From Octopus bimaculoides (taxonomy: Eukaryota), in the NCBI RefSeq assembly GCF_001194135.2, contig NC_068982.1, positions 114,051,181 through 114,115,180 on the forward strand: a stretch of DNA of 64,000 bases, in the 5' to 3' direction. The notes beneath the pieces are model-generated. The model had not been told where the DNA came from and did not search any database. It was given only the letters and a program-made list of their open reading frames with translations. Within the stretch, counting starts at the first letter, position 1. Each line of letters begins with the position of its first letter. A program made the translations under genes and the position numbers. Below, in pieces: positions 1 through 55,276 of the stretch.

Positions 1-3000
1 GGCCATTGCCAACAAGAAGAAAATATTGCTTACATCTAAATTGGTATCTTGCTGAAAATAGGAAAGCCAGCTTTGTATAACACAAAACGATATCGGAAGA
101 GTTTGATGAACAGAATAAAAAGTAATTTTTCAGAAATATTTATTAGCAGCTTCAATATATAAAGGGTTCTTTAGCGAAAGGAAATCACATAGTTGAGGAA
201 CGAGAAATTCCTTTTTATTTACTGAGTTTTTGAAGATGTTTTTGAATATTTATCTTTTAAAAAGAAAAAAAAACAACATAATTTTGATTCCCTCCCTCTC
301 TTCAATATACTGTCTGTATTTTTACTTGATCGGTTTGTTTTCTCAAGCTATATAAATAGTCTAAGAATCCATATATCGAGAGAGACTGAAAGAGACAGGT
401 AGGCAAACAGAAACAAACACAAACACAAACACACACACACACACACACACACTACGTGAACATACATGCAATTTCACTTAGTCAGTGAGCGTGCACTCAT
501 GCACATATATATGTATGTAAGTATGTATGTATACGCAGATGTATGCATGTTCGTATGCATGCATGTACAGTACTTATATAATTCTGCTATTATTATGTCA
601 CTGAGTTGCCTCGTGTTGTTCAATCACTTCTGTTTTACTGGGATCGGCCTAAGATGTCTGCTTGAAATTGAAAAAGAATTCCAAGATATTTGGAGACTAG
701 ACAGAAGATTTGAAATCATTTGTTGTGTTTGAAGGGATGCTAAAGATTATGACTTTTTCGGTATGCTATAAATATTTCCCAGGTATTATGCAAAACTAAA
801 GCGAAAATGTATTTCGCTTTGCTATAGAAATTACTGCTTTGAATTTTCTTATTCGTATGACTCAACAGAAAGATGCTTTTTGCAAACAGTTTCTTGTCAT
901 TTAATCTACACACCTACTCGTGCCATCTCACTAAGATTTATTTTTAAAGATTTATTTAATGCTTGCATCATTAACTGTTATAATGCCTATACTGAATAGT
1001 TATTATTAACGTAGGAAAATTCCGAAGAGAAAGTAATCCTATTGTCTATTTTGCTAGCTGTTAACAAATAATTCAAATTCTTAAAAATAATTACTGAAAT
1101 TTCATGTTTATAATAAACTCCAAACAATTCTTTCTCGTTTGTGCTTGTTTGTTTTATAGAGAAAAATAATCCTCTTTCCACAAATAACAGTAAGATTTGA
1201 TGTAGTAACTCATGACGGCATTAAACTTAGAATTGTATTACGTATGTTTCTTTAAATATTTATTTCACATCTCTCTATGCCCTGAGCCACCAGTTTCGAG
1301 AAAATAAATATCAGTAATGCACTGAAATTGATTCAGCAAATTTTACACCTGCCCTGCGAAAGATGATGCGTCTAGTAAGGAATGATAAACCTGCAAAATT
1401 TCATTTCTTCTATCATTTAAATAGTGTGTTAATTACGGTTGTTACAAATCATAGCTGAAGCTACCAATCTACTGACATCTATTCAAAAGCAGAAGAAAGA
1501 GTCACCCCATTTCCACGTTAATATTGAATGATTCTTTTCCTACTTCTCAAACATATTTACCTATTTTCTGGCGATAATATATTTCTACGTCACAGAGATT
1601 TATTCCAAGATGTATACTATGATGTATACAATTTTCTTACAGATAATGTAAGAAAAACGCCTAAAAAGGCGTTTTAATATTATAATTAAAATTTTTTCAT
1701 CAGATATACAGTAGGACGTATATCTAACGAAAACTGACAGACTGTTAATGGATAAATGTAATATAGGTATGGATACTAGAAATTCACTTTGCCATTAGTG
1801 GTTTCGGATTCAATTTCTTTATGCGATACCTTCGGTGTCTTCCACTTTAACCTCGGGTAGATCAAAGCCTTTTTGATCGAAACTGTGTTACACAAGAACA
1901 AGAAATGTCCTTCTGACAGGATGTCAGACTTAAATCGCAGCCTGGTTTGACACTAGCCGAAGGCCATCTCGTCTTTGTGTTTATTACAGACTACGTTGAA
2001 ACCTTCCAATAATATCTACGTTATTTAAGACATTATGGCATGATTTGGTGGGGTATTTGGTTGCTATTTCTACCAGATAAAACAAGCACATAAGAGTTCT
2101 TCGCATTGGCTCTAATTTAGTTACATCTATGTTATGCTTATTATAAACAAAAAAATATATATAATCTATAAGCGAAAATTCAATCCTATCAAGCACTCGA
2201 ACGTTTTCAACATTCATTTCGTGGGAAAATTTAGGATTAGATCTCCCTACTTGCCAAAAGTCAGGGAGGCCCTGAAAAGAATCATGAACATTGTTGTTTT
2301 TTCTTTGAATAGACTCCCTCAAGTTCATGAACCAACGGTCTCATAAATTTCTATATAAACAGCGAGATTAGCATTTCTAACTACTCAAGAGACTAGTGAA
2401 TTCTATGATAACCATTGTCATAAATGCTTCTCTATTAACGATACAAGTGTTTGAGTACTTCAATTTATTTAAAGATTATATAATTCTGTTTATACATTGA
2501 CATAACATATAAGTAACCCACAACATGTCACCAGACTAGAAGAAAAATAATGGAAGCCCATATTCAATAGTTCGACCGGTTAGAAATGGCAGCCAAATAT
2601 GTTAAATTGTATACAGACACTTTCCAAAAACATATTCAGATTGTTTTAGTATAAACCAAGATCACTTGGTCATGCAGAGTTCAGTTATGTCAGATATGCA
2701 GTAACGTTAAACCTGTTCTATAATAAACTACATTGTGTATGTTAGATATATTGATAGAAACTTCAACGTAAGTGTGTCACTCTAAAACTGATGGTCACAA
2801 AAGTGCAGAAAACTATAGAATATTATATTGACTCTGCAGGACATTTTGAAGTAAAATTGTCTTCATAATAAAGTTATATAAAGTTTTATTGTCTTTCATC
2901 GATAATATTTGCTGCTTACTTTGAACCCAGAGAAGCAATTGATTTTGTAAATATGATGTTATATAGTGCATGCACTCTTCTGTTTGTTGGGGTCCTAAGG

Positions 3001-4902: not shown

Positions 4903-7900
4903 ACGTAGATCATTCTTCACTGGATCGTGGGGGAGATATTAGATTGTTCAGTATACAACCATAGTATTCATGCGGATTTTAAGACTCGAATCTCCCCAGA
5001 AAAGATGATATGTTCTGTTTGTTACAACTCATAATTTTAAACGTAGCTAAGTTTGAAAAAGGTAATTGTAATTATGAAAATGTCATTAAAAATATATAAA
5101 TGAATTAAAATTATATATTTGTGACAAAGTTTTCAAAAAATTAATTAATGTTTTAACAAACAGAATTAAGAGAATAAAAGTAAGTTAATGTAATAAAAAA
5201 AATTTAGAGACAATCCAATAATTACAAAGAAATAACGAGAAAAAAGGTGAAGTAGATAAAATATTTTAGAGCTGGCGAGTGAGAAAAAACGAGCTAAAGT
5301 CTAATAATACCAACATTACAACAGCATTTACTTTTACTTCAACATAACATGTTCTGTTTATATCAGCACTAAATTTAACAGTACTATGCGGAAATGAGAT
5401 ATTGCAGATTAATCCTGATAAAACAACATCAAGTAAGACAAATTTACAACGTTTTTCTGGCTTCTTTAAACCTTCAAAGAAGGTACTAAAATATAAAACC
5501 GACAACAAATGCGAATAAAGATATTTATTTATTGCTACATGGAAATAATAAAACAATAAAAACAAATATACTGATTTTAATGGTATTTTTTCTCCTCCAT
5601 AAATTGGGAGTGCTTCTTTTTTTTTTAAGTACGAGGCGCAGACAGCTCAAATGACTTAAACGTCATGAATCAATTGATGAGAGTGTTTTCCCCCCCATGC
5701 AAAAATTCAATTTGTTTTTATAATGGGACTCTCTTTTGGATGATGAGATAAAGTGATGAAAATATGGAACGGTTTTTATATATATTGCTCATTGTAAACT
5801 AATTTCTCTTGTTTTGTTTTGTGAGTTTCAATGAAATTCCCGACAGAATTTACATTTAGCTAGATATGAAAATTTGAAACATTTTATTCTAGTTTTCTAG
5901 GATTATCTCATCACTCATCCAATTTACTGAAAGCCTTATTACCCCCAATGGACTCGAGTATATAAGGAATAATCGAAATGATTTAAGCTCCAATAATTAG
6001 CACGGTCTCCGCCAGAAAACATACAAAAAGTTGTTCCATTAGCTTTAATATGATTTATAAAAATATAGAGCTCTGGGAAGTAACATTTAAATGTAACATC
6101 AGAGAAATGAGTATGTTAATGGAAAAGGGTATCAGTGACATTAGACTGCACCGATCAAGTGTTGACCAAAGCAATGATAATCTAAACATTCTTTCCTTGC
6201 CAACAATTTTAATTCCATCTTTGAGGACTTCCATTTTTTATTCGAAAATTTGCTCTTCGTGATACCCAGAATCCATGCTTCACAGCACTGACTCTTTGAC
6301 TTATACGCTATATTTATAGTAGGTTATATACTCAATACCAATTACATAGTAACGCGAACGATCCAGAACGTTGAGTCATTAACTTGCTTGAGACATTAAC
6401 TTTTCTCTGTTCTCATTTCCAATTCTATCCAATTCTAGCGGCTTCTTTCACCTTGCCAACTTCACACACCGTTTCCTTTTCTCTCTTTCTCTTGGCCTTC
6501 AATTTTATTCCTCATATCATGCCTTTCATTCCTTCCTTACTTTTTCTATTGCTTTTTCAGGTGGAAGGGAGTGCCTATGATGCTGGTGTTTTACGGTGCC
6601 TGCAAGACTGGTGGACAAAAGAGAAAGTTATCCTCAAACATGAAACCTGGTCTAAATGCTTGCAATAGAGTAGACACTACTAAAGGCACCCACTGATTAA
6701 ATGGGTGTGTTAATCAGAGCGAAGGAACAAGTCTAACATTCAAGTAGACCATATCAGGATTTGAATTCATGACTCAAGGAACTAGGATAAAATTCCGCAA
6801 GGTGTCTTCTTCGACACTAGAATTATTCCGTCACTCTAGACTGGTATTGATTCTTCGATCCCGGAAGCAAATCTGACTTCGGTGAGAGTGAACTAAAAAT
6901 GGAAAAAGGAATAAACACCGCACAGTATTTCGTTCGATGCTTAAAAGCCGTTCGTCTAAAGCTTACCTACAACCAAAACCACAACACCACTTTCTTACTC
7001 AACCAGATAAAGTCAAAAACGTTAGATACTTGATTTATCAAATTTTTGCACAAACCATTCCATGGATTAATTGTAGATCATCATTAGTTTCTCTAGATTC
7101 TGGATTTACTCTATTTTTAAATTACTGAAGTTTAAATGTATATTCGTAGTCGATTACTTTAAATGTATAAACAACTAATACGAATTTGGCAGTTCATAGA
7201 TGGGATAAACAATAGGAAAATAATGCCAATTCTAAAAGAATTGCACTGGTTCTCCTTTAATATTAAATTAACAAGAAAGGAGATCAGAGATTAATCTCTG
7301 AAGTCAAAGACCAAACGAAGATAATTGATTTCAGTATTGTGAACAATATATATTGTCCAGAAAGAAATCAAACAATATCTAAATATCCTAAACAGTCAGA
7401 AGTTGATAGATCGTGTATTGTACTAAATAACTATACCTTAGAACAATACGGTTGTAACACACACTGATTGACTAGCATCACATAAATACACGCGAAATAT
7501 AGACTGGATCTATCGGCATTTGGTTTTATCGATTAATCAATAGAGATCCATTTCACAGACATCGGCCGAGCTGGCAACAGTGAAACCTCTCTGTTGGAAA
7601 AAAAAAAGAAAGAATATAAGAATAAATAAAATAAAATAAAAGGGGGAACGGCAAGTTTGGTAAATTCCGATTTCTGGCTCACATGTAACTAACTGTTTTG
7701 TCAGCCAGTTCTACAACACGAGACGCTAACTTCAGTTCGATATATTGATTACGACTCAGCCAAAAGGCATCTTAAATATTAAACTCCTCAGAAATAGCCA
7801 CCTCATACCAGTCCTGTTCCACTGTTAAAACTATTGAACAGTTCTCAGTCATATCTAATCAGGAAGTATTGCTTTGACTTGCTTCACGCTTATGCCCCAG

Positions 7901-8726: not shown

Positions 8727-8951
8727 AAGGCAGCGAGCTGGCAGAATCGTTAGCACGCCGGGCGAAATGCTTAGTGGTATTTCGTCTGTCCTCACGTTCT
8801 TAGTACGAATTCCACCGAGGTCGACTTTGCCTTTCATCCTTTCGGGGTCGATGAATTAAGTACCAGTCACGCACTGGGGTCGATGTAATCGACTATCCTC
8901 CTCCCCTAAATTTGAGGCCTTGTGCCTATAATAGAAAGGATTATTATTATT
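8727..8951 (+). mobile_element. tRNA-derived SINE, family A, full length
   Basis: Head aaggcagcgagctggcagaatcgttagcacgccgggcgaaatgc, body gaggtcgactttgcctttcatcctttcggggtcgat, tail ccttgtgcctataatagaaagg followed by (ATT)n. Near-identical to copies at 10947-11475 and 32623-34549. Confidence 0.9.
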
Positions 8952-8989: not shown

Positions 8990-9135
8990 TTTCCGTTCGA
9001 AGTTCGAATTCTACTGTAGTCGACTTCCCCTTACATAAGTACCAATCAAGTGCTGGATCGATGTGATAGATTTTCTCCTCCCCCCACCTCCTCAAACTTA
9101 TTGGCCTTGTACCAATAACAGAAAGAATTATTAAT
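8990..9135 (+). mobile_element. Degenerate SINE family A fragment
   Basis: ttcgaagttcgaattctactgtagtcgactt...ggccttgtaccaataacagaaagaattatt aligns by eye to the family-A body and tail. Confidence 0.6.
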
Positions 9136-9504
9136 ATCAACAATATATAGAAATGAGAGGTAGATAAAAGTGATGACGTTTTCTGGTAAAATCTTGGCAT
9201 CGACGAAGATGAGCTACGTAATTGCCATGTTTCAACGGATTTTCGGGCCGGGGAACGTCATGAATAACTTCTGGAGATAGCTGGCCTGGAAGCTATCGAG
9301 AGAACCTGCTAGATTGAAGGTAAACTCAATGGACACGGGATTGCCGCCAGGTGGGTCTGCCCGAAACGTGCGCAGAGCGACGAAATCGTATTGTCCGCAC
9401 TCTTGCAAAGTCGAGGATTGCTGATTTCAGGAGTTACGTCGAACAGTTGTTGTCATGTGTAGGACGAATCCGACTATTGGCCGAATTCATCGTAAGGGTT
9501 GCCC

Positions 9505-12055
9505 ACCACGCCGATTTTTAAGTATTTTATCTTATTTTCAGTGTTTCTCTCCATTTTCTCTTTTCTTCCCGATAATAATTTGTCAAACATTGACCTGACT
9601 TTCCTGCCGAACATTAGTGCAGCTGGTGACATACCTGAAGTAGTGTTGGGATTCGGTGTTATTCGGCAGACACTTAGGAATTGTGTCAATGCAGTATCAG
9701 CCAGTAGCTCATTCCTAGATTTTTTCAGCGCCCCCTTAAATGTCTCTACAAAACGTTCTGCTAGTCCATTCGATCTCGGATGGTATGGCAGAGTAAGTAA
9801 TATGCTCCATTGCATGCATTTTGCAAAAGTTCTCAAATTGCTTCGACGTGAACTGTTTCCCATTATCAGGCACTATAGCGTCTGGAACGCCATATCGCGC
9901 AAAAAGTTCGTCCAGAAATTCCATTGTTAATTTGGAGGTTGGCTTCCTCCATTTACATATTTCCGGCCACTTCATGTAACTAGCCACGCCTATTAGATAA
10001 TACCTTCCATTTAATGGTCCTGCGAAGTCTATGTGTTATCTGGACCAAAGTATGCTGGTCCTGGATCAAGGCTGAATTTTCATAGGTGGTGATCTTGTTG
10101 TCACGGTACAACCCCTGCAGGCTTTCACCAAATTTTTCAATATCCTGATCCATATTCGGCTAGTAAACGTAGCTCCCCATCACTGCTTTCATTCTCGCGA
10201 TTCCTGGATATCTCATGGAATTCTTTTAGCATACGATTTTGAAAAGAAACAGGCATTACAACCTACTGAGCGTACATAAGTACGTCATCACATATCGAAT
10301 ACCATTTCGAAACTGTGTTTTGCTCGACTACATAAGTTTTTGTATTTGCTTCTGACTTCACCATATTTTTCATTTTAATTATGAACACATCCTTCCCTGC
10401 TTTAATTTTTATTTTCTCTGAATTGACAGGTAGTTCACGTACTACGTTGCATCGTATATCTTTTATTTTGATTTCAGCTTTTAATGCCGCTATTATTGCG
10501 TCCTCTAACGGTTCATTGTACTTAGGTATCAATCTTGACATGGCAGAAATTCCATCTTAAAGTAATGATTTACTAGGATCGTCTCCTAGCGCTGTGGCTG
10601 TAGTTTTTTTCAGCCGCCAACAATGAACGTGAAGCATGAGCGATGGATTTTAGGCTACCATTTTCATACTTGTGCAAAATCACCACTCTTATACCACTTT
10701 CACTAGCATTTGATGCTACTACTATTTTAAAATTTGGATCAAAGTGTGATAATGACGCATCCAATGTAAAAACTTTTAAAATTTCTTCGAATGCTTTTTG
10801 GCACCTGTTCGACCAATACCATTTAACGTCTTTTTACAATAGGTTGTTTAGGGGTGCTCTTAGCTCATGCATATTCGGTATATATATTTGGTAATAGCTT
10901 GCGAGCCCCAAGAACGCTTGTAACGTTGTAATATTTTTCGGGGGAGAAGGCGGTGAGTTGACAGAATCGTTAGCCCTCTGGATGAAATGCTTAGCGGTAT
11001 TTCGTCTGCCGCTACGTTCTGAGTTCAAATTCCGCTGAGGTCGACTTTGCCTTTCATCCTTTCGGGGTCGATTAAATAAGTACCAGTTACGCACTGAGGT
11101 CGATATAATCGACTTAACCCGTTTGTCTGTCCTTGTTTGTCCCCCCTGTGTGTAGCCCCTTGTGGGCAGTAAAGAAATAAAAAATGTTAGCGCGCTAACG
11201 TATAATCGACTTAATCCGTTTGTCTGTTCATGTTTGTCCCCTCTGTGTGTAGCCCCTTGTGGGCAGTAAAGAAATAAGAAATGTTAGCACGTCGGGCGAA
11301 ATACTTAGCGGTATTTCGTCTGTCTTTACGTTCTGAGTTCAAATTCCGCCGAGGTCGACTTTGCTTTTCATCCTTTCGGAGTCGATAAATTAAGTACCAG
11401 TTGCGTACTGGGGTAGATCTAATTGACTGGCCCCCTCCCCAAAAATTTTGGGTCTTGTGCCTAGAGTAGAAAAGGATATTTTTCGGGGGAGGCATATTTT
11501 TTATTGCAGTCGATCTTGAAGTATGTGTCCTGCGACCATTTTTATCGATAACTTGCCCTAGATATTTTATTTCTGGCATGAAAAATTCGCATTTTTCCTC
11601 ACTAAGTTTAAATCCATATTTCCTTATTCTTTCAAAGACCTTTTTAACATGTTCCTCACGCTGGCCTCGAGACTCACTTTTTATGAGTATGTCATCCAAG
11701 TAAGCTATAGCGAAATCCATATCTGCAAGCATAGTGTCCATCACCTGTTGGAAAATACTACGTGCCACCTTTATCCCCAAAGGAAGTCGATTAAATTTAT
11801 ATAAACCTTTATGGGTGTTTACTGTTAATAATTTCGAACACTCCTCTTCGACTTATGACTGTATATATACCTCTGACAAGTCCAGGTCCAACTTTAAAAA
11901 AAATATTTCCTCCATTGAGTTTCGCAAAAATTTCCTCCGGCCTTGATAATGGGTAATTGTATGTCATGAAACGTTCGTTCAAGCCTGTTGAAAAGTCAGC
12001 GCATACTTGTATTTTTTTATTTTTCATTTTTTACATAAACAGTTGCTGACACCCA
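9505..12055 (-). mobile_element. pol: Ty3/Gypsy LTR-retrotransposon pol pseudogene (RT, RNase H, integrase), interrupted by SINEs
   Basis: Minus-strand fragments: WVSATVYVK/KIQVCADFSTGLN, MGIKVARSIFQQVMDTML...AYLDDILI (RT YLDD), FLGLASYY, DASLSHFDPN...SNASESGI...AHASRSL..AEKNYS (RNase H), MASYMKWPE...FARYGVPDAIVPDNGKQF, PYHPRSNGLAERFV (integrase). Many frameshifts and stops; no LTRs found. Confidence 0.93.
10947..11475 (+). mobile_element. Composite SINE (family A with nested alternative-tail SINE copies) inserted in Gypsy RT
   Basis: Perfect 16-bp TSD atatttttcgggggag at 10931-10946 and 11476-11491; the Gypsy peptide PPKNI is duplicated on both sides. Confidence 0.92.
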
Positions 12056-12358
12056 TCCTCCTTCCCTCCTCAACAAGGTATGAAACTCCTTGAAGTCTCT
12101 GTCCTTTACTTCCAATTCACGCATCTGCAGTAGCTCAGCTGTCAGGCTCTTGCCCGTCACTGCAGCATAACTGCCTGTTTGGGCCTGCGCATTCATAATT
12201 ACGTTGTTCATCGTTTTACCCATAAATGGTGAAGCCAAATAAAATTTTTCAATAAATTCAAAAAAATCACAAATACAACAATCACAATATTCAACAATTC
12301 TGTAATTCAAAGCAACAACGCACGTGTGAGCGAAATCAAGACAACAACTCCTTCACAA
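12056..12358 (-). pseudogene. 5' fragment (UTR plus ORF1 N-terminus) of an L1/Tx1-like element related to 32684-34382
   Basis: MGKTMNN...GSYAAVTGKSLTAELLQMRELEVKDRDFKEFHTLLRREG aligns ungapped to ELEVREIKVEPRKMKKSEKLITKEG (9/25 identical) and shares SYAA. Both have a similar TTG-rich leader and start context. Confidence 0.6.
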
Positions 12359-12737: not shown

Positions 12738-12892
12738 GATCGGACAAACTGTCTAGCGTCATCGAGGTCGACTTTGTCTTTGATCCTTTCGAAGTCGATA
12801 AAATAAAATATCAGTCAAACACTGGGTTTGATGTAATTGACTGCAACCTATCTAGAAATTTCAGACCTTGTGCCTATAGTAGAAAGAATAAC
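12738..12892 (+). mobile_element. Degenerate SINE family A
   Basis: gaggtcgactttgtctttgatcctttcgaagtcgataaa...ccttgtgcctatagtagaaagaataa. Confidence 0.75.
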
Positions 12893-13790: not shown

Positions 13791-16216
13791 TTCATATAAC
13801 ATTATTCTAAAATCGAAATATAATATTTGAATTATTATTTTACAATTAGGTAGACGTGTAGTTTGCTTTGAATTTGTTCATAACCACACACTTTTCAAGA
13901 AACTCGATATATAAATTCGTAATCGCCCTTGGTGCGTAATCTGCTAATGTGTGGAAAGCCTCATCTACGTCGTTGTCATTTAAGTAGTGTTTCGTATAAG
14001 TGGTCCTGTCATGTATTTCAAAAGTTTTAAACAGCAAGTGCCAGAAGATAGAGTGTTGGACAATTAAGTCTTCAGTAAGGATGGTTATATTCAGAGAATT
14101 ATAAACGTGTATTCGATGGTTTTTATTGACTTACACACGGTATTGTACACTCCTTAGCTTACATGTTATATGTCACTCCAAATATAGGATCCAGTTTAGT
14201 CTTCGATTGTTTTTTAACTTAAGTGCCAAATGTCAATACTGTCCGGACAAGAGACGCAGTTTCACAAAATCGATTAAAATTCCATTGAAAACTGTTCGAA
14301 TATATTATATCAAGGTGACCTGCTCTCGTTGCTTTCTACAATAATATGATATTAGCATTTCTTTTATTTATCTACTTATTTATACTTATTTATATATTTG
14401 ACAAGCCTTGTCAAAAGTTTAAGCGAGTAACATCGTGAATTCAACAGATGTAATGTACTGGAGTTTTCTCTTTAGTTTCTTCACATTTTTTTTATTCACT
14501 GTCAAAGCTGACACTAGTATTTCCTTCTAATATGCATTTTCTTCAGAATTTATTAAAGAATACTGATTTGAATAAACGTTGCTTAGACGAGCCTATCACT
14601 TTATATCACCGTAATATCGTTAGAGAAACGCATAACGTTGTTTATATATATATATATATATATATATATGAACTCTGAGGTCATTAGGACTCCAAGCATC
14701 GCCTTAACGGTGGCTTATCCAACAAGTTATTTTTACTGATTAAGAACTTCATTCACACACAAACACACATACACATGTACATATCATGTACATATGTATA
14801 TATTTACGTGTGTGTACTGTGGTAATGAGATTCTCTGACATTAGTCCATTGCGTCAAAAACGGGAGGTGGTTAAATAAACAGCTATTTAGTGATGAGAAT
14901 GAAGTCATAATGAGAAATCAGGTAAACGAAAGCAATAAATCAATGTTAATTATCTGTGTAGCAAGAAACAAGCCCCAGTCCGTGAAGTGATTTCGATTTC
15001 CGCTTGGAACCACCCCATTTTACTTACTTCAAAATAGTATAGAGAAAGGCATAAACATTATTCACTTCTCGTATAAAATGTACGGCATTTTTTGTCCTAG
15101 AAATCAATACATTAATCATATACCGTACAAAACTCATGTACCATTAATAGGTTTAGCTTGTTTAGTTAATGGAAAATACCCTAGCCTACAGCTATATGAA
15201 GAATCATATGTTGGAAGTTATAGTGTTTCAATACCGTCGTCAAGGCGTTTGTTTGATGCAGAAACGGTTTGCGGCAGATTTCACGAAATATTTTTTCGTC
15301 ACAGAATTGATTACATTGTGTTACAGAAATATAAGTGATGCTGATGTGTCCGAGTATAGAAACATTAGCGAAACTACAACATTACTAATTGTAAAGTAAA
15401 ACCAATTTTAAAAAGTTTAGAAATTATTTGCAGCCATTTCATATTAAGTTGTCTGAAAATCTTTTCATTTCAACTGATGGAAAATATTCATATATTAATT
15501 TGTAACCGTTGAAGAGAAAGACTTTTAAGATCTTCTACGGAATTTTTAATAAGATATTCTCCAGTGAGATTTATTTCATGCCAGGTTTCTGTCGACAATA
15601 AGTATTTCACAAGGCGATGTTTAAGAAGTCGTCATTAGCAAACGACGAATACTCTAGCATAAATGATAGGAACAAAAGAGAGAGCAATGTTTATTAACTT
15701 TCCAGCTTTCAGGTTTGTTTTGTCTCGAAAGATTACTTAGCTGAAAGAGAAACCGATTCTGTAACTTATCACATTTTTATTTTACTTTTCCGCTATTATT
15801 TCTATTGACAGTTTGTTTACCAAAGCTGGTGGCGTCTAAGATCTTAGCAAAGCTGTCCATTTTAATTTCAATGTGCAGCTCATAAGAACTGAAAGGTCAG
15901 TTGTGGTTAATATCTTAGTTGATTACAGCTAAACTACTTTTATTCAAATTACAGTTTCTTTCGTTACATCACAAATTCTTTCATCTCTTTTCTTTCTACA
16001 TTTCCTTATTTCTTCATTTCCATGATACGAAAACCTTCGTTTTCATATTCATTGATGCATTTAGATACTGCACTGCATATATATTTCCTGGCACAAATTT
16101 AATATATTCATACAAACACACACACATGCATATGCACATACATGCATAAGAAATCAACTGTATACATTTACTCACACAAGTGTTAGCATTATACATACAT
16201 GCACAATGTATGTTTG

Positions 16217-16256
<40 letters not shown>

Positions 16257-16508
16257 CTTAGAATCTTCTATATATATATATATATACATATATTTACATA
16301 TATTGATACACGCAATTATATACACATGAGTGTGTGTGTGTGTAGCACTTTATATTTAAGTTCACAGAATCAGATGACAATAAGCGACAAAGGATTCACT
16401 AGACGCGTTTCGCGAAACTTCGGATTCGAAGTCAGTCACTTTGCATTTCGCTTGAGTTATACATGAGTGTGCGTACTTATGTACACATATATGCAGATAC
16501 CCAGCCAG

Positions 16509-16548
<40 letters not shown>

Positions 16549-17171
16549 TCACACATACACGCACAGGCACACACACACGCGCGCGCACATCGTTCTACAC
16601 TTTTCTATACGCAGTAGTTCACTTACCCAAACTTTATATCAATCACCTAGAACCTTTTCCCCAAAACAATAAACTTAAAGTAACTCCCTCCATAACTTAT
16701 CAGCAATGCCGTAGAACATGAAATGCAGCAAATCATCAAACTGAACTACTCGCACGCACGTACACACACTACACACACATACACACACACACACATACGC
16801 ACACGCACACATACGCATGCGTGTGGAAGACAAATGTACTAGGATTTGTATACACGAGTTTGTAATTGAATATCTAAAACGATTTGCAATGCACAAATCT
16901 ATAGATGAAGATATAGACATCAATGGCTTATGCAAGAATGTAATAAAGTAGTATACTGGAAACTAACAAAAAGGCATTTTGGGTTAAGGAAAAATAAAAT
17001 GAACGAAATAGATCGCGGATGAAAGATGGGAGGTTATTGTGACACGAAAGAAGTAAAATAAAATTCTTAAATTTGCAGAGGGAATCGAATGGATTTAAAA
17101 TTGTATAGCTAAATGCTGGAGTCTCAATAGAAAGGTGAAAAAGTTGTTAAAGAAGAGATAAAAGAAGATTC

Positions 17172-17650
17172 ATGAAAATGAAAGCCGATGAAGCAGATAA
17201 ATTCCTCGATGCAGGAGACAGTAGAGGAATTAGAAAAGCTTATGAAATAATAAATGGGATTACAGGCAAAGTAAAGAGATCAAAACGAATACCACAGTTA
17301 TTTATTGATGAGGGAACTAATAACATGTGCTATAAACAAGTAAAGAAATGGAGAAAACATTTTAATGCAGACATGAAAAATACGTTTAATAAGAGAAGCG
17401 ATCAAGAGGAGCTGAAAGTGGCTGTCCATGAAATACCTTTTGAAGAAGTAACAAGGGTCATCGAGCTGTTAAAAAAAAAGTTCAGAAAGGTTTCTGGATC
17501 CAGGATAAATGCTAAAAGCAGATAAGCACTTAACTGCAAGACCATTGTTGAAACTGTTTCATAATACATGAAGCATTGAACAGATGCTTTAAGATTGGAA
17601 GGGTGGTAGAGTATCTAGGATATCAAGCACAAAGGGAACTCGGAGTATGA
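17172..17650 (+). pseudogene. LINE (RTE-like) ORF2 remnant, linker and start of RT
   Basis: ADEADKFLDAGDSRGIRKAYEII...KWRKHF...IPFEEVTRVIELLK..K.SGS, then WKGG...KG, matching the pre-RT region of APE-type LINEs. Confidence 0.65.
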
Positions 17651-25798: not shown

Positions 25799-26482
25799 TC
25801 TATATACTTATATATACACATACATCTGTATGCATATATATATATAGATACACACATTTATATACATATATATATATACATATATACGCACGTTTATATA
25901 CACATACATACATATATATATATTTTCATAGAAAAACATGTAATCGTTACCAATATAGCAAGAGATTTCACCGCAAAAAAGTCTCAAGTAGACTCCTTAA
26001 GGATCGTTCTCCTTGGTTATATATTCAAAGTTTAAATTGAAAAGAAAATTTTGACGCTAATATCCATTATTATTGAAATTTATTCCTATGTCAACATTTC
26101 TGTATAAGGCTATATTTGACTGTCAAATTTAAGTCAAACATATAATTTGCCTTACACGTCTTCAGGGAAATAAATTTAAGAACAAACAAAAAATCAAAAA
26201 AATCAAGAACAAGAGGTAAATACCAAGACATCGTCTCTAAGTCCCGTCCATATTCAAATTTGTCGTTAAATGACTCGTTAAATAAGTTCCTTCTTAAACA
26301 AAGGTCCATTAAGGGGAGACAACCCCTCATAATTCTAACAATAATATTAATAATATTGATAAGTTATAAACAATTCTCTATTACAATGGAAATCTATACT
26401 ATATTATCTCTAGGATCTATTGTAAAAACCACAACTGTGTTTGGTAAATTATACATTGATATGGCCTGCCTTATATATGTTT

Positions 26483-26671
26483 TGTGTGTCTGTGTCTGTC
26501 CCCCCAGCATCGCTTGACAGCCGATGTTGGTGCATTTATGTCCCCCGTAACTTAGCGGTTCGGCAAGAGTGGCCGATACAATAAGTCATGGTGTCGATTT
26601 GTTCGACTAATGGTGATGCTCCAGCATGACCGCAGTGAAATGACTGAAACAAGTAAAAGAACAAAAGAATA
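26483..26671 (+). mobile_element. SINE family B, 3' half
   Basis: tgtctgtcccccagcatcgcttgacagccgatg...gtaacttagcggttcggcaa...gctccagcatgaccgcagtgaaatgactgaaacaagtaaaagaa. Confidence 0.85.
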
Positions 26672-28745: not shown

Positions 28746-29655
28746 ACTTATATATATATNNNNNNNNNNNNNNNNNNNNNNNNNNNNNNNTATATATACA
28801 TATAATCAATTAAAATCTAGAATTGAGAAGCAAAGAGATTTAATTCTAATGGTTACAACTGTTTCGTAATTCACCCTCAATAACATTAACAACTCTGAAT
28901 CGAAAGTACATGTACAGTGTATACACTTCACATACACATTATATACATTTATGCATACATATATATGCACAAATACAATTGCATAGATACATGAAGATGC
29001 ACCAAAGAGAACTACTCTTCTGAGCGTTCCCAAACATCTCAGATTCGTCTCATTCTTTGAATTGAAAAAAAAAAACGTCGTAGAAACAAGTACCAATTCC
29101 TTGTTTAAAATATATATTCAAAAAGACAGCGCCTGATTTCGAATATCATGGAAGATAAAGCATAATTTATTTTCGCGTGGTTCCATGTTTACTATTCTTT
29201 ATACTGCCAAAATATTCAAATATGTTCTGTTTCAAATATATTCAAACAATATAAAATCTGACGGCTCGATTTGTAGAGCATAAATCCTGAATATTTCAGA
29301 AATATAAAGAGATTTAAATGTAAAACAATGAAAGAAAATAATTCTCTATGTTACATACGAAGTATTTGAAGCTGTGTATAATATTGAAGAAACCGACTTT
29401 TAAATGTGAAATTCCAAGTACGTGGAATATACTGTATATACTGTACACACAAAAACACGCACATACACACGCATATACTATACACACACATAAATACGGT
29501 GAATAATTTGGTTCTCATTTTCTGTTTTCTTCACTTTCTCAATGAAATATATGCGATAAAGTAAAAGAAATTTGTATTTTTCCCCAAAAATGTGCATACC
29601 AAGTTATACGCACCATATGCATATGTGCTATTTAAAGCACATATACATGTAGTGT

Positions 29656-29731
29656 GCCCGGCTAGCTCAGTCGGCAGAGCACGAGACTCTTAATCTCGGG
29701 GTCGTGGGTTCGTGCCCCACGTTGGGCGCCA
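29656..29731 (+). tRNA. tRNA-Lys-CTT: tRNA-Lys(CTT) with genomically encoded CCA, probably a retrocopy
   Basis: 73-nt cloverleaf GCCCGGC...GTTGGGCG with anticodon CTT; differs from the canonical animal tRNA-Lys-CTT at 20 (C), 27/43 (compensatory C-G) and 58 (T). Followed by CCA, with no oligo-T terminator. Confidence 0.92.
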
Positions 29732-32019: not shown

Positions 32020-32192
32020 TGTGTGTGTGTGTGTGTGTGTGTGTGTTTATGTTTGTCCCCCCCCCTTCCCGATATTGGTGTGTTTACTAGGATTACAAAG
32101 AATAAATCCTGGGGTTGATTTGTTCGACTAAAGGCGGTGCTCCAGCATAGCCGCAGTGAAATGACTGAAACAAATAAAAGAATAAAAGAATA
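32020..32192 (+). mobile_element. SINE family B, 3' half, internally deleted
   Basis: (TG)n then tttgtccccccc...tcctggggttgatttgttcgactaaaggcggtgctccagcat...gactgaaacaaataaaagaataaaagaata. Confidence 0.85.
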
Positions 32193-32683
32193 TAGAAAAG
32201 TATTTAGTTATAAGGGGATGATGATACGGAAATAAATATAATTCCACAAATGCAAACACTTTGAAGTAAACTAGATAATCTATCCACTGATATAATATTT
32301 TAATTGTAGATTAAGTCATTCATAAGATTTATATTTGTTTGGGGAAAAATATACCAGTGATGATTTACGGTGACAGCAATTTGCTTATTGGAGATCTTTG
32401 GAAGATTCCTATACGTTCAGTTACCATGCGGAGGGAATAATTTAATTTTTGGTTATTGTCTTTTGTCTGGGTGTAAGGAGGAGAGAGAAAGTGGTGTTAC
32501 TCAACCAGTTAGCTTCGTTGTTGTTTTTTTTTGTGTGTGTATGAGCGAAGGCGTGGATGTGTAATTAACAATTTCAGTAAGAATTGCTCTTACAGATATC
32601 CAATATTATAATTGAGCAACATAAGGCAGCGAGCTGACAGAATCGCTAACACGCCGGACGAAATGCCTAGCGGTATTTCGTCT

Positions 32684-34382
32684 CTGTGGAGTTATTGCAT
32701 GAGTTTATGTTGAAATATTTATCGAATTGTTGCCATTGTTATTAATTTGAATTGTTGTTAGAACTGTTGCTGTTGTCAATTTGTTAATTGTTGGGTTTTT
32801 TTTTTCCATTGTGGGAAAATGGAGAAGATGCTGGAGGGAGGCCCAAGTTATGCGGCCGCAACGAGTAGAGGAGTAGACGTGCAAGAGTTGGAGGTCCGCG
32901 AGATAAAGGTGGAGCCTAGAAAGATGAAGAAGAGTGAAAAATTAATCACTAAGGAAGGTAATATTCTGAAGCTAACACCACCTGAAGATTTATTGGCCAT
33001 GTGTTAAAAAGAACGGTAACATTTGAAAACATGAAGACAGCCACAAGAAAAATAGAGATTGCGCCGATAGAAACCATAGAGGAGTGTATGAAGGAGTTGA
33101 AAAGATTTACAACATACATTACGAGAGGGAGAAAATACACCACTGTGGAAGTGCGCTTTACAACGGAGGAGGAAGCAATAAAGCACTCCACAGAGGTTAT
33201 AAGGTCAGAAGAATAGATGCTCCTGTCTTCGTACTGCGGCAAACGTGTGGCCAAAGTGCGAGTAGGTAAGGTTTCACCCGAATTAAAGGAAGAATGGCTG
33301 AAGACAGCAATAATATATAATATGAAGGATGGGAAGATTTTGATGGCTACCAGGACCCAGGAAGTAAACTACTGGGGATATGGTATTAAATTGACAATAC
33401 AGGCAACTACGGAGGATTTGAACAGTGTGGTGGATGAGATTGTGTTGTCAGAAGATGTAAGATTGAGAGTCGGTGTAGAGGGAAGGCCGCCGATATGTTT
33501 CACATGTGGAGAGAGGGGCTACATGAAGGCGTGGTGCGCCCAAAGAGAACAACAAGCAGAACAGGTGGAGAGAAAGGAGAGTATGGACCGGGTCATGGTA
33601 ACAGAAAAAGAAACAGAGAATGGATTTACTATGGTTAAAAAGAAAAGAAGGAGGAGCGGAGGAATGAGTTCTCCGCCAGAGAAGCAGAAAAAGAAGAAAG
33701 AAGAGGTGAGAAAAGAAACTGTGATGGAGGTCAGTAAGATTCGGAAATACAACTGTAGGAAGGAGAGTTGGAGTGATTATTTAGGATAGAGGGAGGAAAA
33801 ACAGAACAAAAAGTACAAGATAAAGGCAAGCAGATACGAGGAGGAGATGGAGTTTGGTATTATGTGACATACCCAAAGAATGTTGAAACCGAAAAAAAGA
33901 TAAGTTTCATTCAATAGTAAGAGTGAAGGTGCCTTCATACGTCTACGTAGAGGATATGAAGGCAATACTGATTGAAGAAGAGAACTACAGAAGGTTGAAA
34001 GAGATGTGTGGAGATAGCGTTGACCCACCAGGAGTGGAGGTAGAATTCAAGGAGTTGCCACCAGTAGTGAATATAAGAGATATTGAACCACTGATGAAGT
34101 TCTACTAAAAGAGGAAAAATAATGTATGTTAAATGATATTAATTTTAGGAAAATAATGGTGATAAAGTAGTAAAAAAAAAAGAACAATTGTAGATAGTAC
34201 ATATAATGGTTCAAATGGTACCGTATGGGAGTGGGGCCTGTGTGGCCATTTTCATTTTTTTTTCATTATTATATAATTTCATCCCATTTACATTAGTTTT
34301 ATGTTTTTTGTCCCCACTGTGGTCTTGTCTGTACTGGTGGTGTCCGCATCTGTGTTTAGGGCTTTATGCCTAATAAAGAAAT
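32684..34382 (+). mobile_element. ORF1-only (no ORF2) L1/Tx1-like non-LTR element
   Basis: Perfect 13-bp TSD cggtatttcgtct (32671-32683; 34383-34395). Has a TTG-rich 5' leader, disrupted ORF1 and ~270-bp 3' UTR ending aataaagaaat; no endonuclease or RT sequence. Confidence 0.85.
32819..34108 (+). pseudogene. Disrupted gag-like ORF1 (RRM-like region plus CCHC zinc knuckle)
   Basis: MEKMLEGGPSYAAA..., KVRVGKVSPELKEEWL, VEGRPPICFTCGERGYMKAWC (C-x2-C-x4-[H>Y]-x4-C), basic KKKRRR tail, C-terminal ...EPLMKFY*. A frameshift near 33000, a stop at 33214 and further breaks after 33789. Confidence 0.8.
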
Positions 34383-36039
34383 CGGTATTTCGTCTGTCGC
34401 TACGTTCTAAGTTCAAATTCCGCCGAGGTCAACTTTGTCTTTCATCATTTCGGGGTCGATAAATTAAATATCGGTCAAGTACTGGGGTCGATATGATCAA
34501 CTCACCTCCTCACCCAAAATTTCAGGCTTGTGCTACAGTAGAAAGGATCATAACTGAACAACAACAATTTCGCCAAAAGGGCTTCTAACTGAATGCTGAA
34601 TACGAAATAAGATTTTTCCTATTAAACTTAGTTTTCTTCTAGCGATATGTTAATTTATCTTTACCACATTAGCATATTCACCTGATAAAAATGAATTATT
34701 ATAATTAAAGACTTTAATATTAATATGTATGCTGTATTAATTTTTATGTCAAATTAGTATGATGTATTGCTTTAGGACGAGAGTTCTGACAATGCTGGGA
34801 TAAATTTGATTATCTTGGCAAACTGCGATGTTTGAACAACGTTTAAACCTGCTTATACATGAGCCCAGTGTCTCTGTGTGGAGCAGTTTCGCGTCAGTCT
34901 GCTTGTAAATAATACATTGTATACAAGCAAATGTATATTGCTCCTTGGTTTAATATCAGTGATATGTTTATCCAGATGTTTTGTCATACTACGGAACTGT
35001 GTCACTCATCCTAATTCCTTTCATTAATCTTTTAAATCCCAGAGAAGCAACTTTTCACCATTAGTAGAAAAAGAAAATGCTTCAAATTTTAATTCAAATG
35101 TAAACTTGGCAATCAAAAACATGAGTGTGGTTTTTCATATTCGTTGTATAACTTGTTAACAGGATGGCTAAACATGTTAACATGACTTGTTAACAGGATG
35201 GCTAAATGGTTCAAATCACAAGTCATGTGTTATTCGAAAGGAACCCGAAAAATAACATATCACGGTTATTTCTAACGTGAGAGTACTAAAGAGAATACTT
35301 CAAAAACAAAGAGCTTGAATAAATCAAATTCCTTCCGGTCTCAACCTCCAGTAGCTAATCATCCTGAGCTTTGAGTAACGAGGAATATGAGCTGGACCTT
35401 ATGTTCCAAATAAAAAGATAAAAACAAATAAAAAAGATAGAAACATTTTTGTCCTAACTTAATAGGCTCCCTGCTCCTTCATTGAAACATTACTGTCAAA
35501 AAAGATCTGAATGATATTTTTTCGTGACATGAATTTAATTGAGGAACAGACTGAACATTACGATTTTAGAATCTTCTAAAATATGATTCAGATTTAGTAT
35601 TTCCCATAACTGCCATGCAGAATGGCTCTTCCATGAAGATAGATTATTGCTAAGTAAAATTGTGAATTCACACATGCGGCTCTTGGTCATAAAAATAACG
35701 TGGATAAAAGTCAATAGTTCACCGGGATTTGAAAAGTTAACCTGAAAGAAGTTCTTCATATTGGAAATATATTCCGTTCCATACCTGTAACACATATTTC
35801 AACTCTGAGAGAGGGATATGACGACATGTACTTGCCTTTAGAAAAAGGTTCAGTATCAGAAATATACGTGGAACATCTGTGCATATCTGAAGGTTATAGC
35901 AATTTTGATATGATTGTAGTAAGATTATGCTAGGTACTATCACTTTTTATGCGAGATACTTCGGACAGGCAAAACCATAACCGTTAATAGAATTCTCTTA
36001 AATAAACGTCACTTGTTCCAGGTAAAATCAAAATCGATT

Positions 36040-37699: not shown

Positions 37700-37990
37700 T
37701 ATCTCATTCTCTGACTGCTTTACTAATTTTGATATCAATCGCTTTGTTGTAGTTCTACAGTTAGAGTACACATTCTCTAATAACTTCACGTAGTCTCCTT
37801 CGATTCCCTTTTCTTCTAGTGCTATTAGTATATCATCAATTTCCACGAAATTAAAAGTTCTTTCACTATCTACAAATGTTAAGCATGATGGTATGTTATA
37901 AGTTTGGCATTTCCCCCTCAATTCAGTTGTAGCATGAATGTAGTCTATTGGGCTGTACTTTTTTCTTAAAGGTAGCCTGTTCTGCTGTAG
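37700..37990 (-). pseudogene. RTE-like LINE reverse transcriptase remnant
   Basis: YSPIDYIHATTELRGKCQTYNIPSCLTFVDSERTFNFVE..IL.AL...GI.GDYVKLL.NVY matches RT subdomains 2-3 (FVDYEKAFDSV). Confidence 0.8.
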
Positions 37991-51950: not shown

Positions 51951-51981
51951 ATAACTTTAGGTAAACATAGCAGGCCAAGAG

Positions 51982-55080: not shown

Positions 55081-55276
55081 TTTACTTGCTTCAGTCATTT
55101 GACTGCGGCCATGCTGGAGCACCGCCTTTAGTCAAGCAAATCGACCCCAGGACTTACTCTTTGTTAGCCTAGTACTTATTCTATCGGTCTCTTTTTTGCC
55201 AAACCGCTAAGTTACGGGGACGTAAACACCAGCATCGGTTGTCAAGCGATGTTGGGGGACAAACACAGACACACAA

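What the first reader, a model, noticed from the sequence alone, without database searches (positions are those of the whole stretch)
11118..11277. SINE variant shares the ORF1-only element's 3' tail, with a covarying stem-loop
Seen: the SINE tails at 11118-11180 and 11201-11277 (ttgtctgtccttgtttgtcccc.ctgtgtgta GCCC cttgt GGGC agtaaagaaat) align in register with the ORF1 element's end at 34325-34382 (ttgtctgtactggtggtgtccgcatctgtgttta GGGC tttat GCCT aataaagaaat). Two stem pairs swap C-G for G-C while the 4-bp stem, 5-nt loop and distance to the end are kept. Known: stringent LINE RTs recognise 3' stem-loops, and SINEs acquire LINE tails to be mobilised. Inference: a family-A SINE head has picked up the tail of the Tx1-like family, making a three-part system (autonomous LINE, ORF1-only element, chimeric SINE) that inserts into SINE heads.
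Basis: partly seen in the sequence, partly recalled or inferred. Interest (0 to 1): 0.8.

Follow-up and report, generated by a model that had tools for sequence, protein, structure and literature searches.

The report
Octopus SINE with borrowed LINE tail
Two neighbouring copies of an octopus SINE end in the same ~56-base tail, including a small hairpin kept by compensating base changes, as a family of ORF1-only elements and an L1/Tx1-type LINE; this is the usual way a SINE hijacks a LINE's copying machinery, so it is a new example of a well-known arrangement.

Summary
The window is Octopus bimaculoides DNA. The tails at 11123-11178 and 11220-11275 are homologous, right up to the last base, to the 3' end of the ORF1-only element at 34325-34382. 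They also match four more 3' ends fetched from elsewhere in the genome: three ORF1-only copies and one LINE with an AP-endonuclease and a zf-RVT domain. A sixth tail lineage (a 132-bp element in L001) and the ordinary 'canonical' tail of the same SINE carry the hairpin at the same place.

Six lineages have six different stems, and all 24 stem cells are paired. The 4-5 bp stem always fills the gap before A(A/G)TAAA(A)GAAA(T/A) (variant forms in L001short and the canonical tail). The covariation is convincing for so few sequences but is not an R-scape-grade test, and the hairpin is thermodynamically weak.

The locus itself is one canonical SINE (14-bp TSD) whose head was hit twice at the same nucleotide by variant-tailed copies. 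The ORF1-only element and the L001 element also sit in SINE heads.

'Tx1-like' and 'autonomous' remain unproven, because the RT lies in an assembly gap. This is a new member of a known kind: a stringent-type LINE/SINE tail partnership with Tx1-style target preference.

The parts
10933..10946 (+). Upstream copy of the 14-bp target-site duplication ATTTTTCGGGGGAG of the host canonical SINE-A
   Evidence: Exact second copy at 11478-11491; it flanks the whole SINE cluster.
10947..10968 (+). 5' part of the head of the host canonical SINE-A, up to the nucleotide before GTTAGC
   Evidence: Homologous to other SINE-A heads. It continues at 11283 after the two inserts.
10969..11185 (+). Variant-tailed SINE copy 1. 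The body runs to ~11115. The LINE-type tail runs 11116-11178 and is followed by AAAAAAT. The copy joins the host head seamlessly by homology.
   Evidence: The body is 85% identical to canonical copies up to AATCGAC and then diverges. Tail: CM R1 72.8 bits, E 1e-14.
11155..11167 (+). Hairpin of copy 1: GCCC CTTGT GGGC
   Evidence: isolated -5.1 kcal/mol; pair probability 0.87-0.93 in the last 40 nt.
11186..11199 (+). GTTAGCGCGC (upstream copy of the ~10-bp target duplication for copy 2) plus a 4-nt filler TAAC
   Evidence: Downstream copy GTTAGCACGT at 11283-11292 differs only by CpG-type transitions. The filler has no counterpart.
11200..11282 (+). Variant-tailed SINE copy 2. It is 5'-truncated, with 16 nt of SINE body plus the tail, and ends in (AAGAAAT)x2.
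   Evidence: 94.8% identical to copy 1 over 77 nt. CM R1 71.6 bits.
11252..11264 (+). Hairpin of copy 2: GCCC CTTGT GGGC
11283..11477 (+). Remainder of the host canonical SINE-A, with the canonical tail. Its hairpin is GGGT CTTGT GCCT at 11450-11462, followed by AGAGTAGAAAAGGAT.
11478..11491 (+). Downstream copy of the 14-bp TSD of the host SINE
32623..32683 (+). 5' part of a SINE-A head interrupted by the ORF1-only element. Its last 13 nt, CGGTATTTCGTCT (32671-32683), are the upstream TSD copy.
32684..34382 (+). ORF1-only non-autonomous LINE derivative (1699 bp). It holds a decayed single ORF at 32819-34108 (frameshift near 32990, stop at 33214, further shifts after 33789) and a 3' UTR at 34109-34382.
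   Evidence: Homologues P0001-P0012 are all O. bimaculoides. The ORF is homologous to the ORF1 fragment upstream of the endonuclease in the L002 LINE.
34325..34382 (+). Tail module of the ORF1-only element. The hairpin GGGC TTTAT GCCT is at 34359-34371 and AATAAAGAAAT at 34372-34382.
   Evidence: (72 bits).
34383..34548 (+). Rest of the interrupted SINE-A, beginning with the downstream TSD copy at 34383-34395. It has a decayed canonical tail.

Best explanation
The ~56-nt tail is the 3'-terminal module of an L1/Tx1-group LINE lineage of Octopus bimaculoides. The same module ends three kinds of element:
- LINE copies;
- a multi-copy family of ~1.7-kb ORF1-only elements;
- a subfamily of the tRNA-like 'family A' SINE.

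The module consists of a pyrimidine/G-rich stretch (TTGTCTGTCC..GT..GTCCCC), a (TG)n-like spacer ending in TA, a 4-5 bp hairpin with a 5-6 nt loop, and the terminal block A(A/G)TAAA(A)GAAA(T/A). There is no poly(A). In the SINE the last unit, AAGAAAT, is repeated.

Inferred mechanism: the LINE's ORF2 protein (possibly with ORF1p) recognises the hairpin plus terminal block on the RNA and starts target-primed reverse transcription there. Any RNA carrying the module (LINE, ORF1-only element, SINE) is then copied in trans. The machinery appears to prefer nick sites in Pol III-type SINE heads and at its own 5' terminus (GTTAGC / GTTGAGCAGC / TAAGTAGC-like). That would explain the double hit in one SINE head at 10968|10969, the ORF1 element in another head, and the head-to-tail arrays elsewhere.

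Shown: tail homology, stem covariation, TSDs and 5' truncation, insertion sites.
Inferred: protein recognition of the hairpin, trans-mobilisation, sequence-specific nicking, clade.
For: Homology to the terminus:
- Shuffle tests and the blind scan.
- CM R1 finds all seven tails at 61-76 bits, while the next hit scores 13.7.

The LINE:
- L002 carries Exo_endo_phos (E 8.8e-9) and zf-RVT (E 4.8e-10) upstream of a tail ending at L002:18070.
- Its endonuclease hits only human L1 EN in the PDB.

The ORF1-only family:
- Four copies share the same architecture: window, L002 x2, L003.
- CCHC knuckle in P0004.
- ORF1 homology to the LINE's ORF1 fragment.

Hairpin stems found:
- GCCC/GGGC (variant SINE)
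- GGGC/GCCU (window ORF1 element)
- UGGC/GCCA (L002/L003 ORF1 elements)
- UCCUA/UAGGA (LINE)
- UGCC/GGCA (L001 short element)
- AGGC/GCCU (canonical SINE)

Hairpin statistics:
- 24 of 24 cells are paired, and only 2 of 720 permutations of the 3' arms reach this.
- A hairpin at a fixed position occurs at 6.7-6.9% of background sites.
- On an unbiased MAFFT alignment, 70.8% of cells are paired against 56.8% in shuffles (0 of 500 reach it). The covariation score is 0.443 against 0.238 (0 of 500), and all slid controls are lower.
- The hairpin dominates the fold of the last 40 nt in every tail.

Retrotransposition marks:
- 13-bp TSD around the ORF1 element.
- 14-bp TSD around the host SINE.
- ~10-bp TSD plus a 4-nt filler and 5' truncation for copy 2.

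Targets: three of three non-array insertions lie in SINE heads, which are 0.84% of the held sequence.

Precedent: L1-Tx1 is annotated as recently active in Octopus vulgaris (PMC13282606). RRM/CCHC ORF1 in non-mammalian animals is reported as consistent with the Tx1 group (PMC5203782).
Against: - Only six lineages (12 sequences) were available, all from one genome. Several are old, decayed copies.
- Full pairing needs a hand-made structural alignment with 1-2 nt register shifts. RNAalifold on the unbiased MAFFT alignment predicts no structure.
- Whole-tail MFE z-scores are weak, -0.4 to -1.5. In 60-100 nt contexts the hairpin sometimes loses to alternative folds.
- The variant SINE is seen only at this one locus (two adjacent copies).
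- The L002 LINE is a different subfamily from the ORF1-only elements (only the last ~57 nt are shared). It is decayed, and its RT is in an assembly gap.
- The nick sites are not identical: the ORF1 element sits ~35 nt downstream of the GTTAGC site.
- The SINE head is not recognised as a tRNA by ARAGORN or Rfam.
Confidence: 0.7

Rival explanations
1. The tails are homologous by descent, but the hairpin has no function. The stem differences are neutral changes that happen to keep a short, weak palindrome, and recognition (if any) rests on the conserved linear blocks.
For: - The stem is only 4 bp, at -1.7 to -5.1 kcal/mol in isolation.
- MFE z-scores are unremarkable.
- RNAalifold on the MAFFT alignment gives nothing.
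- The flanks (TCTGTGT..TA and AATAAAGAAA) are more conserved than the stem.
- Related sequences can beat column shuffles without any structure (tool caveat).
Against: - Stem sequences differ at every pair, yet 24 of 24 cells pair. Pairs 2 and 3 flip independently: L001short has G-C then C-G.
- Only 2 of 720 permutations do as well.
- The background rate of such a hairpin is ~7% per site.
- The hairpin always exactly fills the interval between the two conserved anchors, even when the loop or stem length changes.
Confidence: 0.17
2. There is no variant SINE subfamily. A 5'-truncated fragment of a LINE or ORF1-only element landed in an ordinary SINE, and the junction was then duplicated locally.
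For: Both copies are adjacent, 97 nt apart and 94.8% identical. No other copy was found in 126 kb of octopus sequence.
Against: - No remainder of the canonical tail follows either variant tail. What follows is SINE head sequence from GTTAGC.
- The repeated unit is 93 nt plus a non-homologous 4-nt filler, and copy 2 is bracketed by GTTAGCGCGC / GTTAGCACGT. That fits a TPRT insertion of a 5'-truncated SINE RNA better than a clean tandem duplication.
- Both copies carry the same body/tail junction.
Confidence: 0.12
3. The variant tail was not newly captured from the LINE. The canonical family-A tail already belongs to the same tail family, and the variant arose from it by internal change (gain of the TTGTCTGTCC..GTCCCC stretch, a stem flip) or by recombination between related tails.
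For: - The canonical tails have a hairpin at the same place, with the identical loop CTTGT.
- Their stem (AGGC/GCCT) is almost that of the window ORF1 element.
- They are followed by a related terminal block, ATAGTAGAAAGGAT.
- The LINE-type loops are TTTAT or CGTACT, not CTTGT.
Against: - The first 30 nt of the variant tail are 87-90% identical to the LINE and ORF1-element tails and share the LINE's indel pattern.
- The terminal AGTAAAGAAAT is of the LINE type, not the canonical type.
Confidence: 0.25
4. The similarity is a chance match of low-complexity TG/C-rich sequence.
For: A TG-rich motif of another SINE (GTTTGTGTGTCTGTGTTTGTCCCCCC) also scores fairly high against the tail. blastn inside the window missed the match.
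Against: Shuffle p is about 0.001 or less for four independent tails. The matches run to the exact 3' terminus of TSD-flanked elements. CM scores are 61-76 bits against 13.7 or less for everything else.
Confidence: 0.02

Closest known systems
Stringent-type LINE/SINE pairs with a common 3' tail (e.g. eel UnaL2/UnaSINE1, zebrafish ZfL2; Ohshima/Okada; PMC4176376, PMC3747384)
   Same: The SINE and LINE share the 3'-terminal tens of nucleotides. There is a small stem-loop near the end with a variable stem sequence, a short terminal repeat unit, and no dependence on poly(A). The SINE is presumed to be mobilised in trans through the tail.
   Different: Those partners are L2/CR1/RTE-type LINEs, and the requirement was shown experimentally. 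Here the LINE has L1/Tx1-group features and nothing has been tested experimentally. No mollusc or cephalopod term occurs in the 58-pair survey text (term search).
Maize/sorghum L1-clade LINE (LINE1-1_ZM) with ZmSINE2/3 sharing a 3' stem-loop (Ohshima 2012, PMC3472496)
   Same: An L1-clade LINE with a conserved 3' stem-loop supported by compensatory changes and shared with SINEs.
   Different: It is a plant lineage. The stem-loop precedes a poly(A) tail. No target preference and no ORF1-only third partner are described.
Tx1-Mar LINEs and SINEU in crocodilians (Kojima 2015, PMC4494074); Tx1-clade site-specific elements (Tx1L, Keno, Kibi, Koshi)
   Same: The LINE and its SINE show the same preference for inserting into another repeat family. 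Copies are found flanked by other copies of the same system.
   Different: The SINEU/Tx1-Mar link rests on shared targets and shared 5' heads, and those SINEs have poly(A) tails. Here the link is a shared non-poly(A) 3' tail with a hairpin, and the targets are Pol III SINE heads.
HAL1 ('half-L1') ORF1-only non-autonomous L1 derivatives of mammals (Bao & Jurka 2010; from my own knowledge, not checked here)
   Same: A multi-copy element that keeps ORF1 and the LINE 3' end but has no ORF2.
   Different: HAL1 has the Transposase_22-type ORF1 and a poly(A) end. Here the ORF1 is of the CCHC type and the end is a hairpin tail.

Membership tests
SINE/LINE pair with common 3' tail (stringent type) | The SINE 3' end is homologous to the LINE 3' end up to the terminus | tested here: met
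   SINE tail against the L002 LINE tail is 27/30 identical at the start, with the same indel pattern and the same terminal block.
SINE/LINE pair with common 3' tail (stringent type) | The partner encodes endonuclease and reverse transcriptase (is autonomous) | tested here: inconclusive
   Exo_endo_phos and zf-RVT are found. The RT region is an N gap and the copy is decayed. A protein search with the C-terminus found nothing.
SINE/LINE pair with common 3' tail (stringent type) | Conserved stem-loop near the 3' end, supported by compensatory changes | tested here: met
   Caveats: few sequences, a hand-made structural alignment, and no RNAalifold structure on the MAFFT alignment.
SINE/LINE pair with common 3' tail (stringent type) | The tail is required for reverse transcription / bound by the LINE protein | not testable with these tools
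   Needs a retrotransposition or binding assay.
Tx1 group of the L1 clade | RT-domain phylogeny places the element with Tx1 | not testable with these tools
   The RT of the only LINE copy held lies in an assembly gap (L002 ~15550-16850), and no reference RT set is on hand.
Tx1 group of the L1 clade | AP endonuclease at the N-terminus and a CCHC zinc finger at the C-terminus of ORF2 | tested here: met
   The endonuclease hits only L1 EN chains in the PDB, weakly (E 1.4e-3).
Tx1 group of the L1 clade | Type I ORF1 (RRM plus CCHC knuckle) | tested here: inconclusive
   zf-CCHC is found in P0004. The model shows a beta-alpha-beta-beta-alpha-beta domain at pLDDT 70-79, but Foldseek hits (ACT, NikR, RRM) are all above E 1e-3. 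There is no Pfam RRM hit.
Tx1 group of the L1 clade | Target-specific insertion | tested here: inconclusive
Three of three non-array insertions are in SINE heads (0.84% of the sequence), two hits fall at the same nucleotide, and there are head-to-tail arrays.
ORF1-only non-autonomous LINE derivative (HAL1-like) | The ORF is homologous to a LINE ORF1, with no ORF2, in several copies with the same layout | tested here: met
   In the window, L002A, L002B and L003E1, the ORF stop is followed by a 225-275 nt 3' UTR and then the tail.
tRNA-derived SINE | The head is recognisable as tRNA-derived | tested here: not met
   ARAGORN and Rfam (E up to 1) do not call the head. Only a B-box-like GAGTTCAAATTCCGC is visible. 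'tRNA-like' is therefore an inference.
tRNA-derived SINE | Short, multi-copy, TSD-flanked, non-coding | tested here: met
   At least six copies in the window; a 14-bp TSD at 10933/11478.

The most novel reading that the evidence does not exclude
This is an animal L1/Tx1-group LINE lineage that has given up poly(A) priming for stringent, hairpin-dependent 3' recognition. Its endonuclease nicks a GTTAGC-like motif found in Pol III SINE heads and at its own 5' terminus. As a result the LINE, an ORF1-only parasite and a tail-swapped SINE pile up in SINE heads and in head-to-tail arrays. The abundant canonical octopus SINE uses a sister version of the same hairpin tail, which would tie the octopus SINE expansion to this LINE group.
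Probability: 0.3. Interest if true: 0.55.

Novelty: new member of a known kind. Interest (0 to 1): 0.4.

Why it matters
SINEs make up a very large share of octopus genomes, but no paper found in the library searches made here names their LINE partners. A shared hairpin tail gives a concrete, testable link between a SINE family (variant and probably canonical), an ORF1-only element and an L1/Tx1-type LINE. It would also add an animal L1-group case to the 'stringent' recognition class. In the 58-pair survey read here, the L1-clade examples described are from plants and a green alga (PMC3472496, PMC3747384). The apparent preference for SINE heads would explain the nested and arrayed repeat structures that complicate octopus assemblies. 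The principle itself (a SINE borrows a LINE tail; the stem-loop covaries; Tx1 relatives target other repeats) is textbook.

Tried and rejected
- A metagenome scan for the tail's first 22 nt gave four chance hits in unrelated contigs and no octopus DNA.
- A protein search with the LINE C-terminus gave no hit.
- Look-up of P0004 found no contig on record. Only three ORF1 homologues had genomic DNA, so no large tail collection could be built.
- The window's ORF1 pieces and LINE-like ORFs at 17151, 37673 and 51675 gave no useful Pfam hit. None is related to the L002 LINE.
- RNAalifold on the MAFFT alignment gave no structure.
- The covariance models did not re-register the shifted hairpins, so the structural alignment was made by hand.
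- Weak CM hits at window 2106-2160, 62834-62884, 29343-29391 and 7575-7611 were read and judged to be chance.
- L001 13160-15300 holds further ORF1/LINE-like pieces that I could not resolve.
- The ORF1 structure model was mostly low confidence, and its fold matches were generic.
- A simple tandem duplication of the two tails was considered and judged less likely, because of the 4-nt filler and the TSD-like GTTAGCRCGY repeats.
Full report
**What is at the coordinates**

The window is cephalopod DNA. Every protein homologue of the ORF1 element is from Octopus bimaculoides, and the fetched loci come from assembly GCA_001194135.2.

- TTGTCTGT...GTCCCC..TGTGTGTA GCCC CTTGT GGGC AGTAAAGAAAT at 11123-11178
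- the same at 11220-11275
- TTGTCTGT...TGTGTTTA GGGC TTTAT GCCT AATAAAGAAAT at 34325-34382

From TGTGT to the last base the two kinds of tail align without a gap. Further upstream there is one 2-nt indel. Stem pairs 2 and 3 are C-G in the SINE and G-C in the ORF1 element, and pair 1 changes from G-C to G.U. Loop length (5 nt) and distance to the end (11 nt) are identical.

**Is it more than chance?**

Plain blastn inside the window did not connect the tails. Three other tests did:
- A Smith-Waterman score of the 63-nt SINE tail against the ORF1 tail was reached by 2 of 2000 dinucleotide shuffles.
- A blind scan of all 126 kb of octopus DNA held, on both strands, was run with the SINE tail. After self-hits, the best matches were the 3' ends of three ORF1-only elements (L002 ending at 11114 and 13006; L003 ending at 9737) and of a LINE (L002 ending at 18070). 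These scored 40-42 against a background of 13.7 +/- 4.4, and none of 2000 shuffles reached them.
- A covariance model of the tail scores the seven tails at 61-76 bits. Nothing else scores above 13.7 bits.

Homology is therefore established, and it runs to the exact terminus of TSD-flanked elements.

**The elements**

The window element at 32684-34382 is bracketed by the 13-bp duplication CGGTATTTCGTCT and splits a SINE head. It has one decayed ORF (32819-34108), followed by a 274-nt UTR and the tail. Its intact relatives (P0004, P0005) end with the same ...EPLMKFY and carry a CCHC knuckle.

Copies in L001, L002 and L003 have the same layout, so this is a multi-copy ORF1-only family.

No relative with an RT is in the window. 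In L002, however, a LINE has three parts:
- an ORF1 fragment homologous to the ORF1-only ORF;
- an AP-endonuclease domain (E 8.8e-9);
- a zf-RVT zinc finger (E 4.8e-10).

This LINE ends in ...TTGTCTGTCCTAGTTCGTCCCCTCTATGTA TCCTA TTTAT TAGGA AATAAAAGAAAT. Its endonuclease matches only human L1 EN in the PDB, weakly. Its RT lies in an assembly gap, so clade and autonomy could not be tested.

The available features are an L1-type EN, a C-terminal zinc finger, a CCHC ORF1 and insertion into other repeats. These fit the Tx1 group, which is annotated as recently active in O. vulgaris (PMC13282606). In non-mammalian animals the RRM/CCHC type of ORF1 is reported as consistent with the Tx1 group (PMC5203782).

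**The hairpin**

A second model, of the terminal module only, picked up two more kinds of tail:
- A 132-bp element in L001 (minus strand, 7195 to 7064) ending ...CTCTGTGTAC TGCC TTTAT GGCA AATTAAAATGAAAT.
- Unexpectedly, the ordinary tail of the same SINE family...AAATTTC AGGC CTTGT GCCT ATAGTAGAAAGGAT. Copies are at 8915-8927, 11450-11462 and 12863-12875, with a divergent relative at 9101-9115.

In every lineage the hairpin exactly fills the interval in front of the terminal A-rich block (in the LINE-type tails it is also preceded by a conserved TA), even where the loop is 6 nt or the stem is 5 bp. The six stems are GCCC/GGGC, GGGC/GCCU, UGGC/GCCA, UCCUA/UAGGA, UGCC/GGCA and AGGC/GCCU.

Evidence for the structure:
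- All 24 cells pair.
- Pair 1 has four pair types, and pairs 2, 3 and 4 have two each.
- Pairs 2 and 3 flip independently.
- Only 2 of 720 permutations of the 3' arms do as well.
- Such a hairpin occurs at 6.7-6.9% of arbitrary positions, including positions upstream of ARTAAA.
- On the unbiased MAFFT alignment, which mis-registers four lineages by 1-2 columns, the structure still beats all 500 column shuffles for percent paired (70.8 vs 56.8) and for covariation score (0.443 vs 0.238). It also beats every slid control.

Evidence against the structure:
- RNAalifold finds nothing on that MAFFT alignment.
- Whole-tail z-scores are weak.
- The isolated hairpins are worth only -1.7 to -5.1 kcal/mol, although they dominate the fold of the last 40 nt.

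That could not be done, because only three loci outside the window could be fetched.

**The locus at 10933-11491**

The 14-bp repeat ATTTTTCGGGGGAG at 10933 and 11478 shows that one canonical SINE was inserted into a Gypsy-like pol gene. Its head is interrupted before GTTAGC.

- Copy 1 (10969-11185) joins the host head by homology.
- Copy 2 (11200-11282) is a 5'-truncated copy with 16 nt of SINE body. It is preceded by GTTAGCGCGC plus four unmatched bases and followed by GTTAGCACGT.

The homologous unit is 93 nt plus filler. Two target-primed insertions at the same nucleotide therefore explain the arrangement better than a tandem duplication. That in turn means an RNA carrying SINE body plus variant tail was retrotransposed, so the chimeric SINE is probably real. 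No further copy was seen in 126 kb.

**Targets**

Three independent non-array insertions of this tail family lie in Pol III-type SINE heads:
- the variant SINE in a SINE-A head;
- the ORF1 element in another SINE-A head;
- the L001 element in a SINE-B head, between GTGGTAAG and TAGCTTGC.

Heads make up only 0.84% of the sequence held.

In L002 and L003, elements follow each other head to tail. The tail is followed, after one base, by the next element's 5' terminus GTT(G/A)AG(C/T)AGCAG, which resembles the head sites. This points to sequence-preferring nicking, as is usual for Tx1 relatives (PMC4494074). The sample is small, however, and the ORF1 element's site differs.

**Comparison and verdict**

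Four aspects of the finding each have a known precedent:
- Shared LINE/SINE tails with a covarying stem-loop are the classic 'stringent' arrangement (PMC3747384, PMC4176376).
- An L1-clade example exists in maize (PMC3472496).
- Tx1 relatives with SINEs sharing their target are known from crocodilians (PMC4494074).
- ORF1-only derivatives are known as HAL1 (from my own knowledge).

What is new here is the combination, the host (a mollusc) and the non-poly(A) hairpin tail on an L1/Tx1-type element. There is also a hint that the abundant canonical octopus SINE uses a sister tail.

I therefore file it as a new member of a known kind, with moderate interest.

Noticed in passing
window 8915-8927, 11450-11462, 12863-12875, 9101-9115: The ordinary family-A SINE tails carry a hairpin (AGGC/GGGT/AGAC CTTGT GCCT; TTGG..CCAA in a divergent SINE) at the same place as the LINE-type tails. 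The loop is the same as in the variant, and a related end, A(T/G)A(G/A)TAGAAAGGAT, follows. The canonical SINE may depend on a sister LINE of the same tail family.
   Followed up: partly
L002 9311-18150; L003 8472-10400: ORF1-only elements and a LINE stand head to tail. Each tail is followed, after one base, by the next element's 5' terminus GTTGAGCAGCAG / GTTAAGTAGCAG. That motif resembles the SINE-head sites that were hit.
   Followed up: partly
L001 7064-7195 (minus strand): A 132-bp element ending in the hairpin tail (TGCC TTTAT GGCA AATTAAAATGAAAT) is inserted into the head of a second SINE family, between GTGGTAAG and TAGCTTGC.
   Followed up: partly
window 26482-26503, 32039-32060, 55255-55276(-); L001 18168-18194(-): The second SINE family (head GGCTGTGTGGTAAGTAGCTTGC...) has an internal GTTTGTGTGTCTGTGTTTGTCCCCCC after a variable TG/TA microsatellite. 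It is 23/26 identical to the start of the variant tail. Whether this is a shared module or chance was not resolved.
   Followed up: no
window 9474-12352 (minus strand): Gypsy-like pol remnants (integrase-like, RNase H-like and RT ORFs; RVT_1 E 2e-21) are the host sequence into which the SINE cluster was inserted.
   Followed up: no
window 29656-29731: A regular tRNA-Lys(CTT) gene is predicted by ARAGORN. It carries no insertion.
   Followed up: no
window 41609-42224: Tc1/mariner-type transposase remnants lie next to an assembly gap. Judged by eye from the ORF translations only; no family search was run.
   Followed up: no
window 17151-17522(+), 37673-37999(-), 51675-51956(-): ORFs that look like fragments of other LINE ORF2s, judged by eye from their translations. 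Pfam gave no meaningful hit. They show no similarity to the L002 LINE, and no hairpin tail is nearby.
   Followed up: partly
protein database: All 12 homologues of the ORF1 in a 5.8-billion-protein collection are from O. bimaculoides. Either the family is young or restricted, or other octopus proteomes lack such models.
   Followed up: no
window 11168-11185 and 11265-11282: The variant SINE ends with two units of AAGAAAT (AAAGAAAT AAAAAAT / AAAGAAAT AAGAAAT), whereas the LINE and ORF1 elements have one. Terminal unit repeats are typical of slippage at the start of reverse transcription.
   Followed up: no
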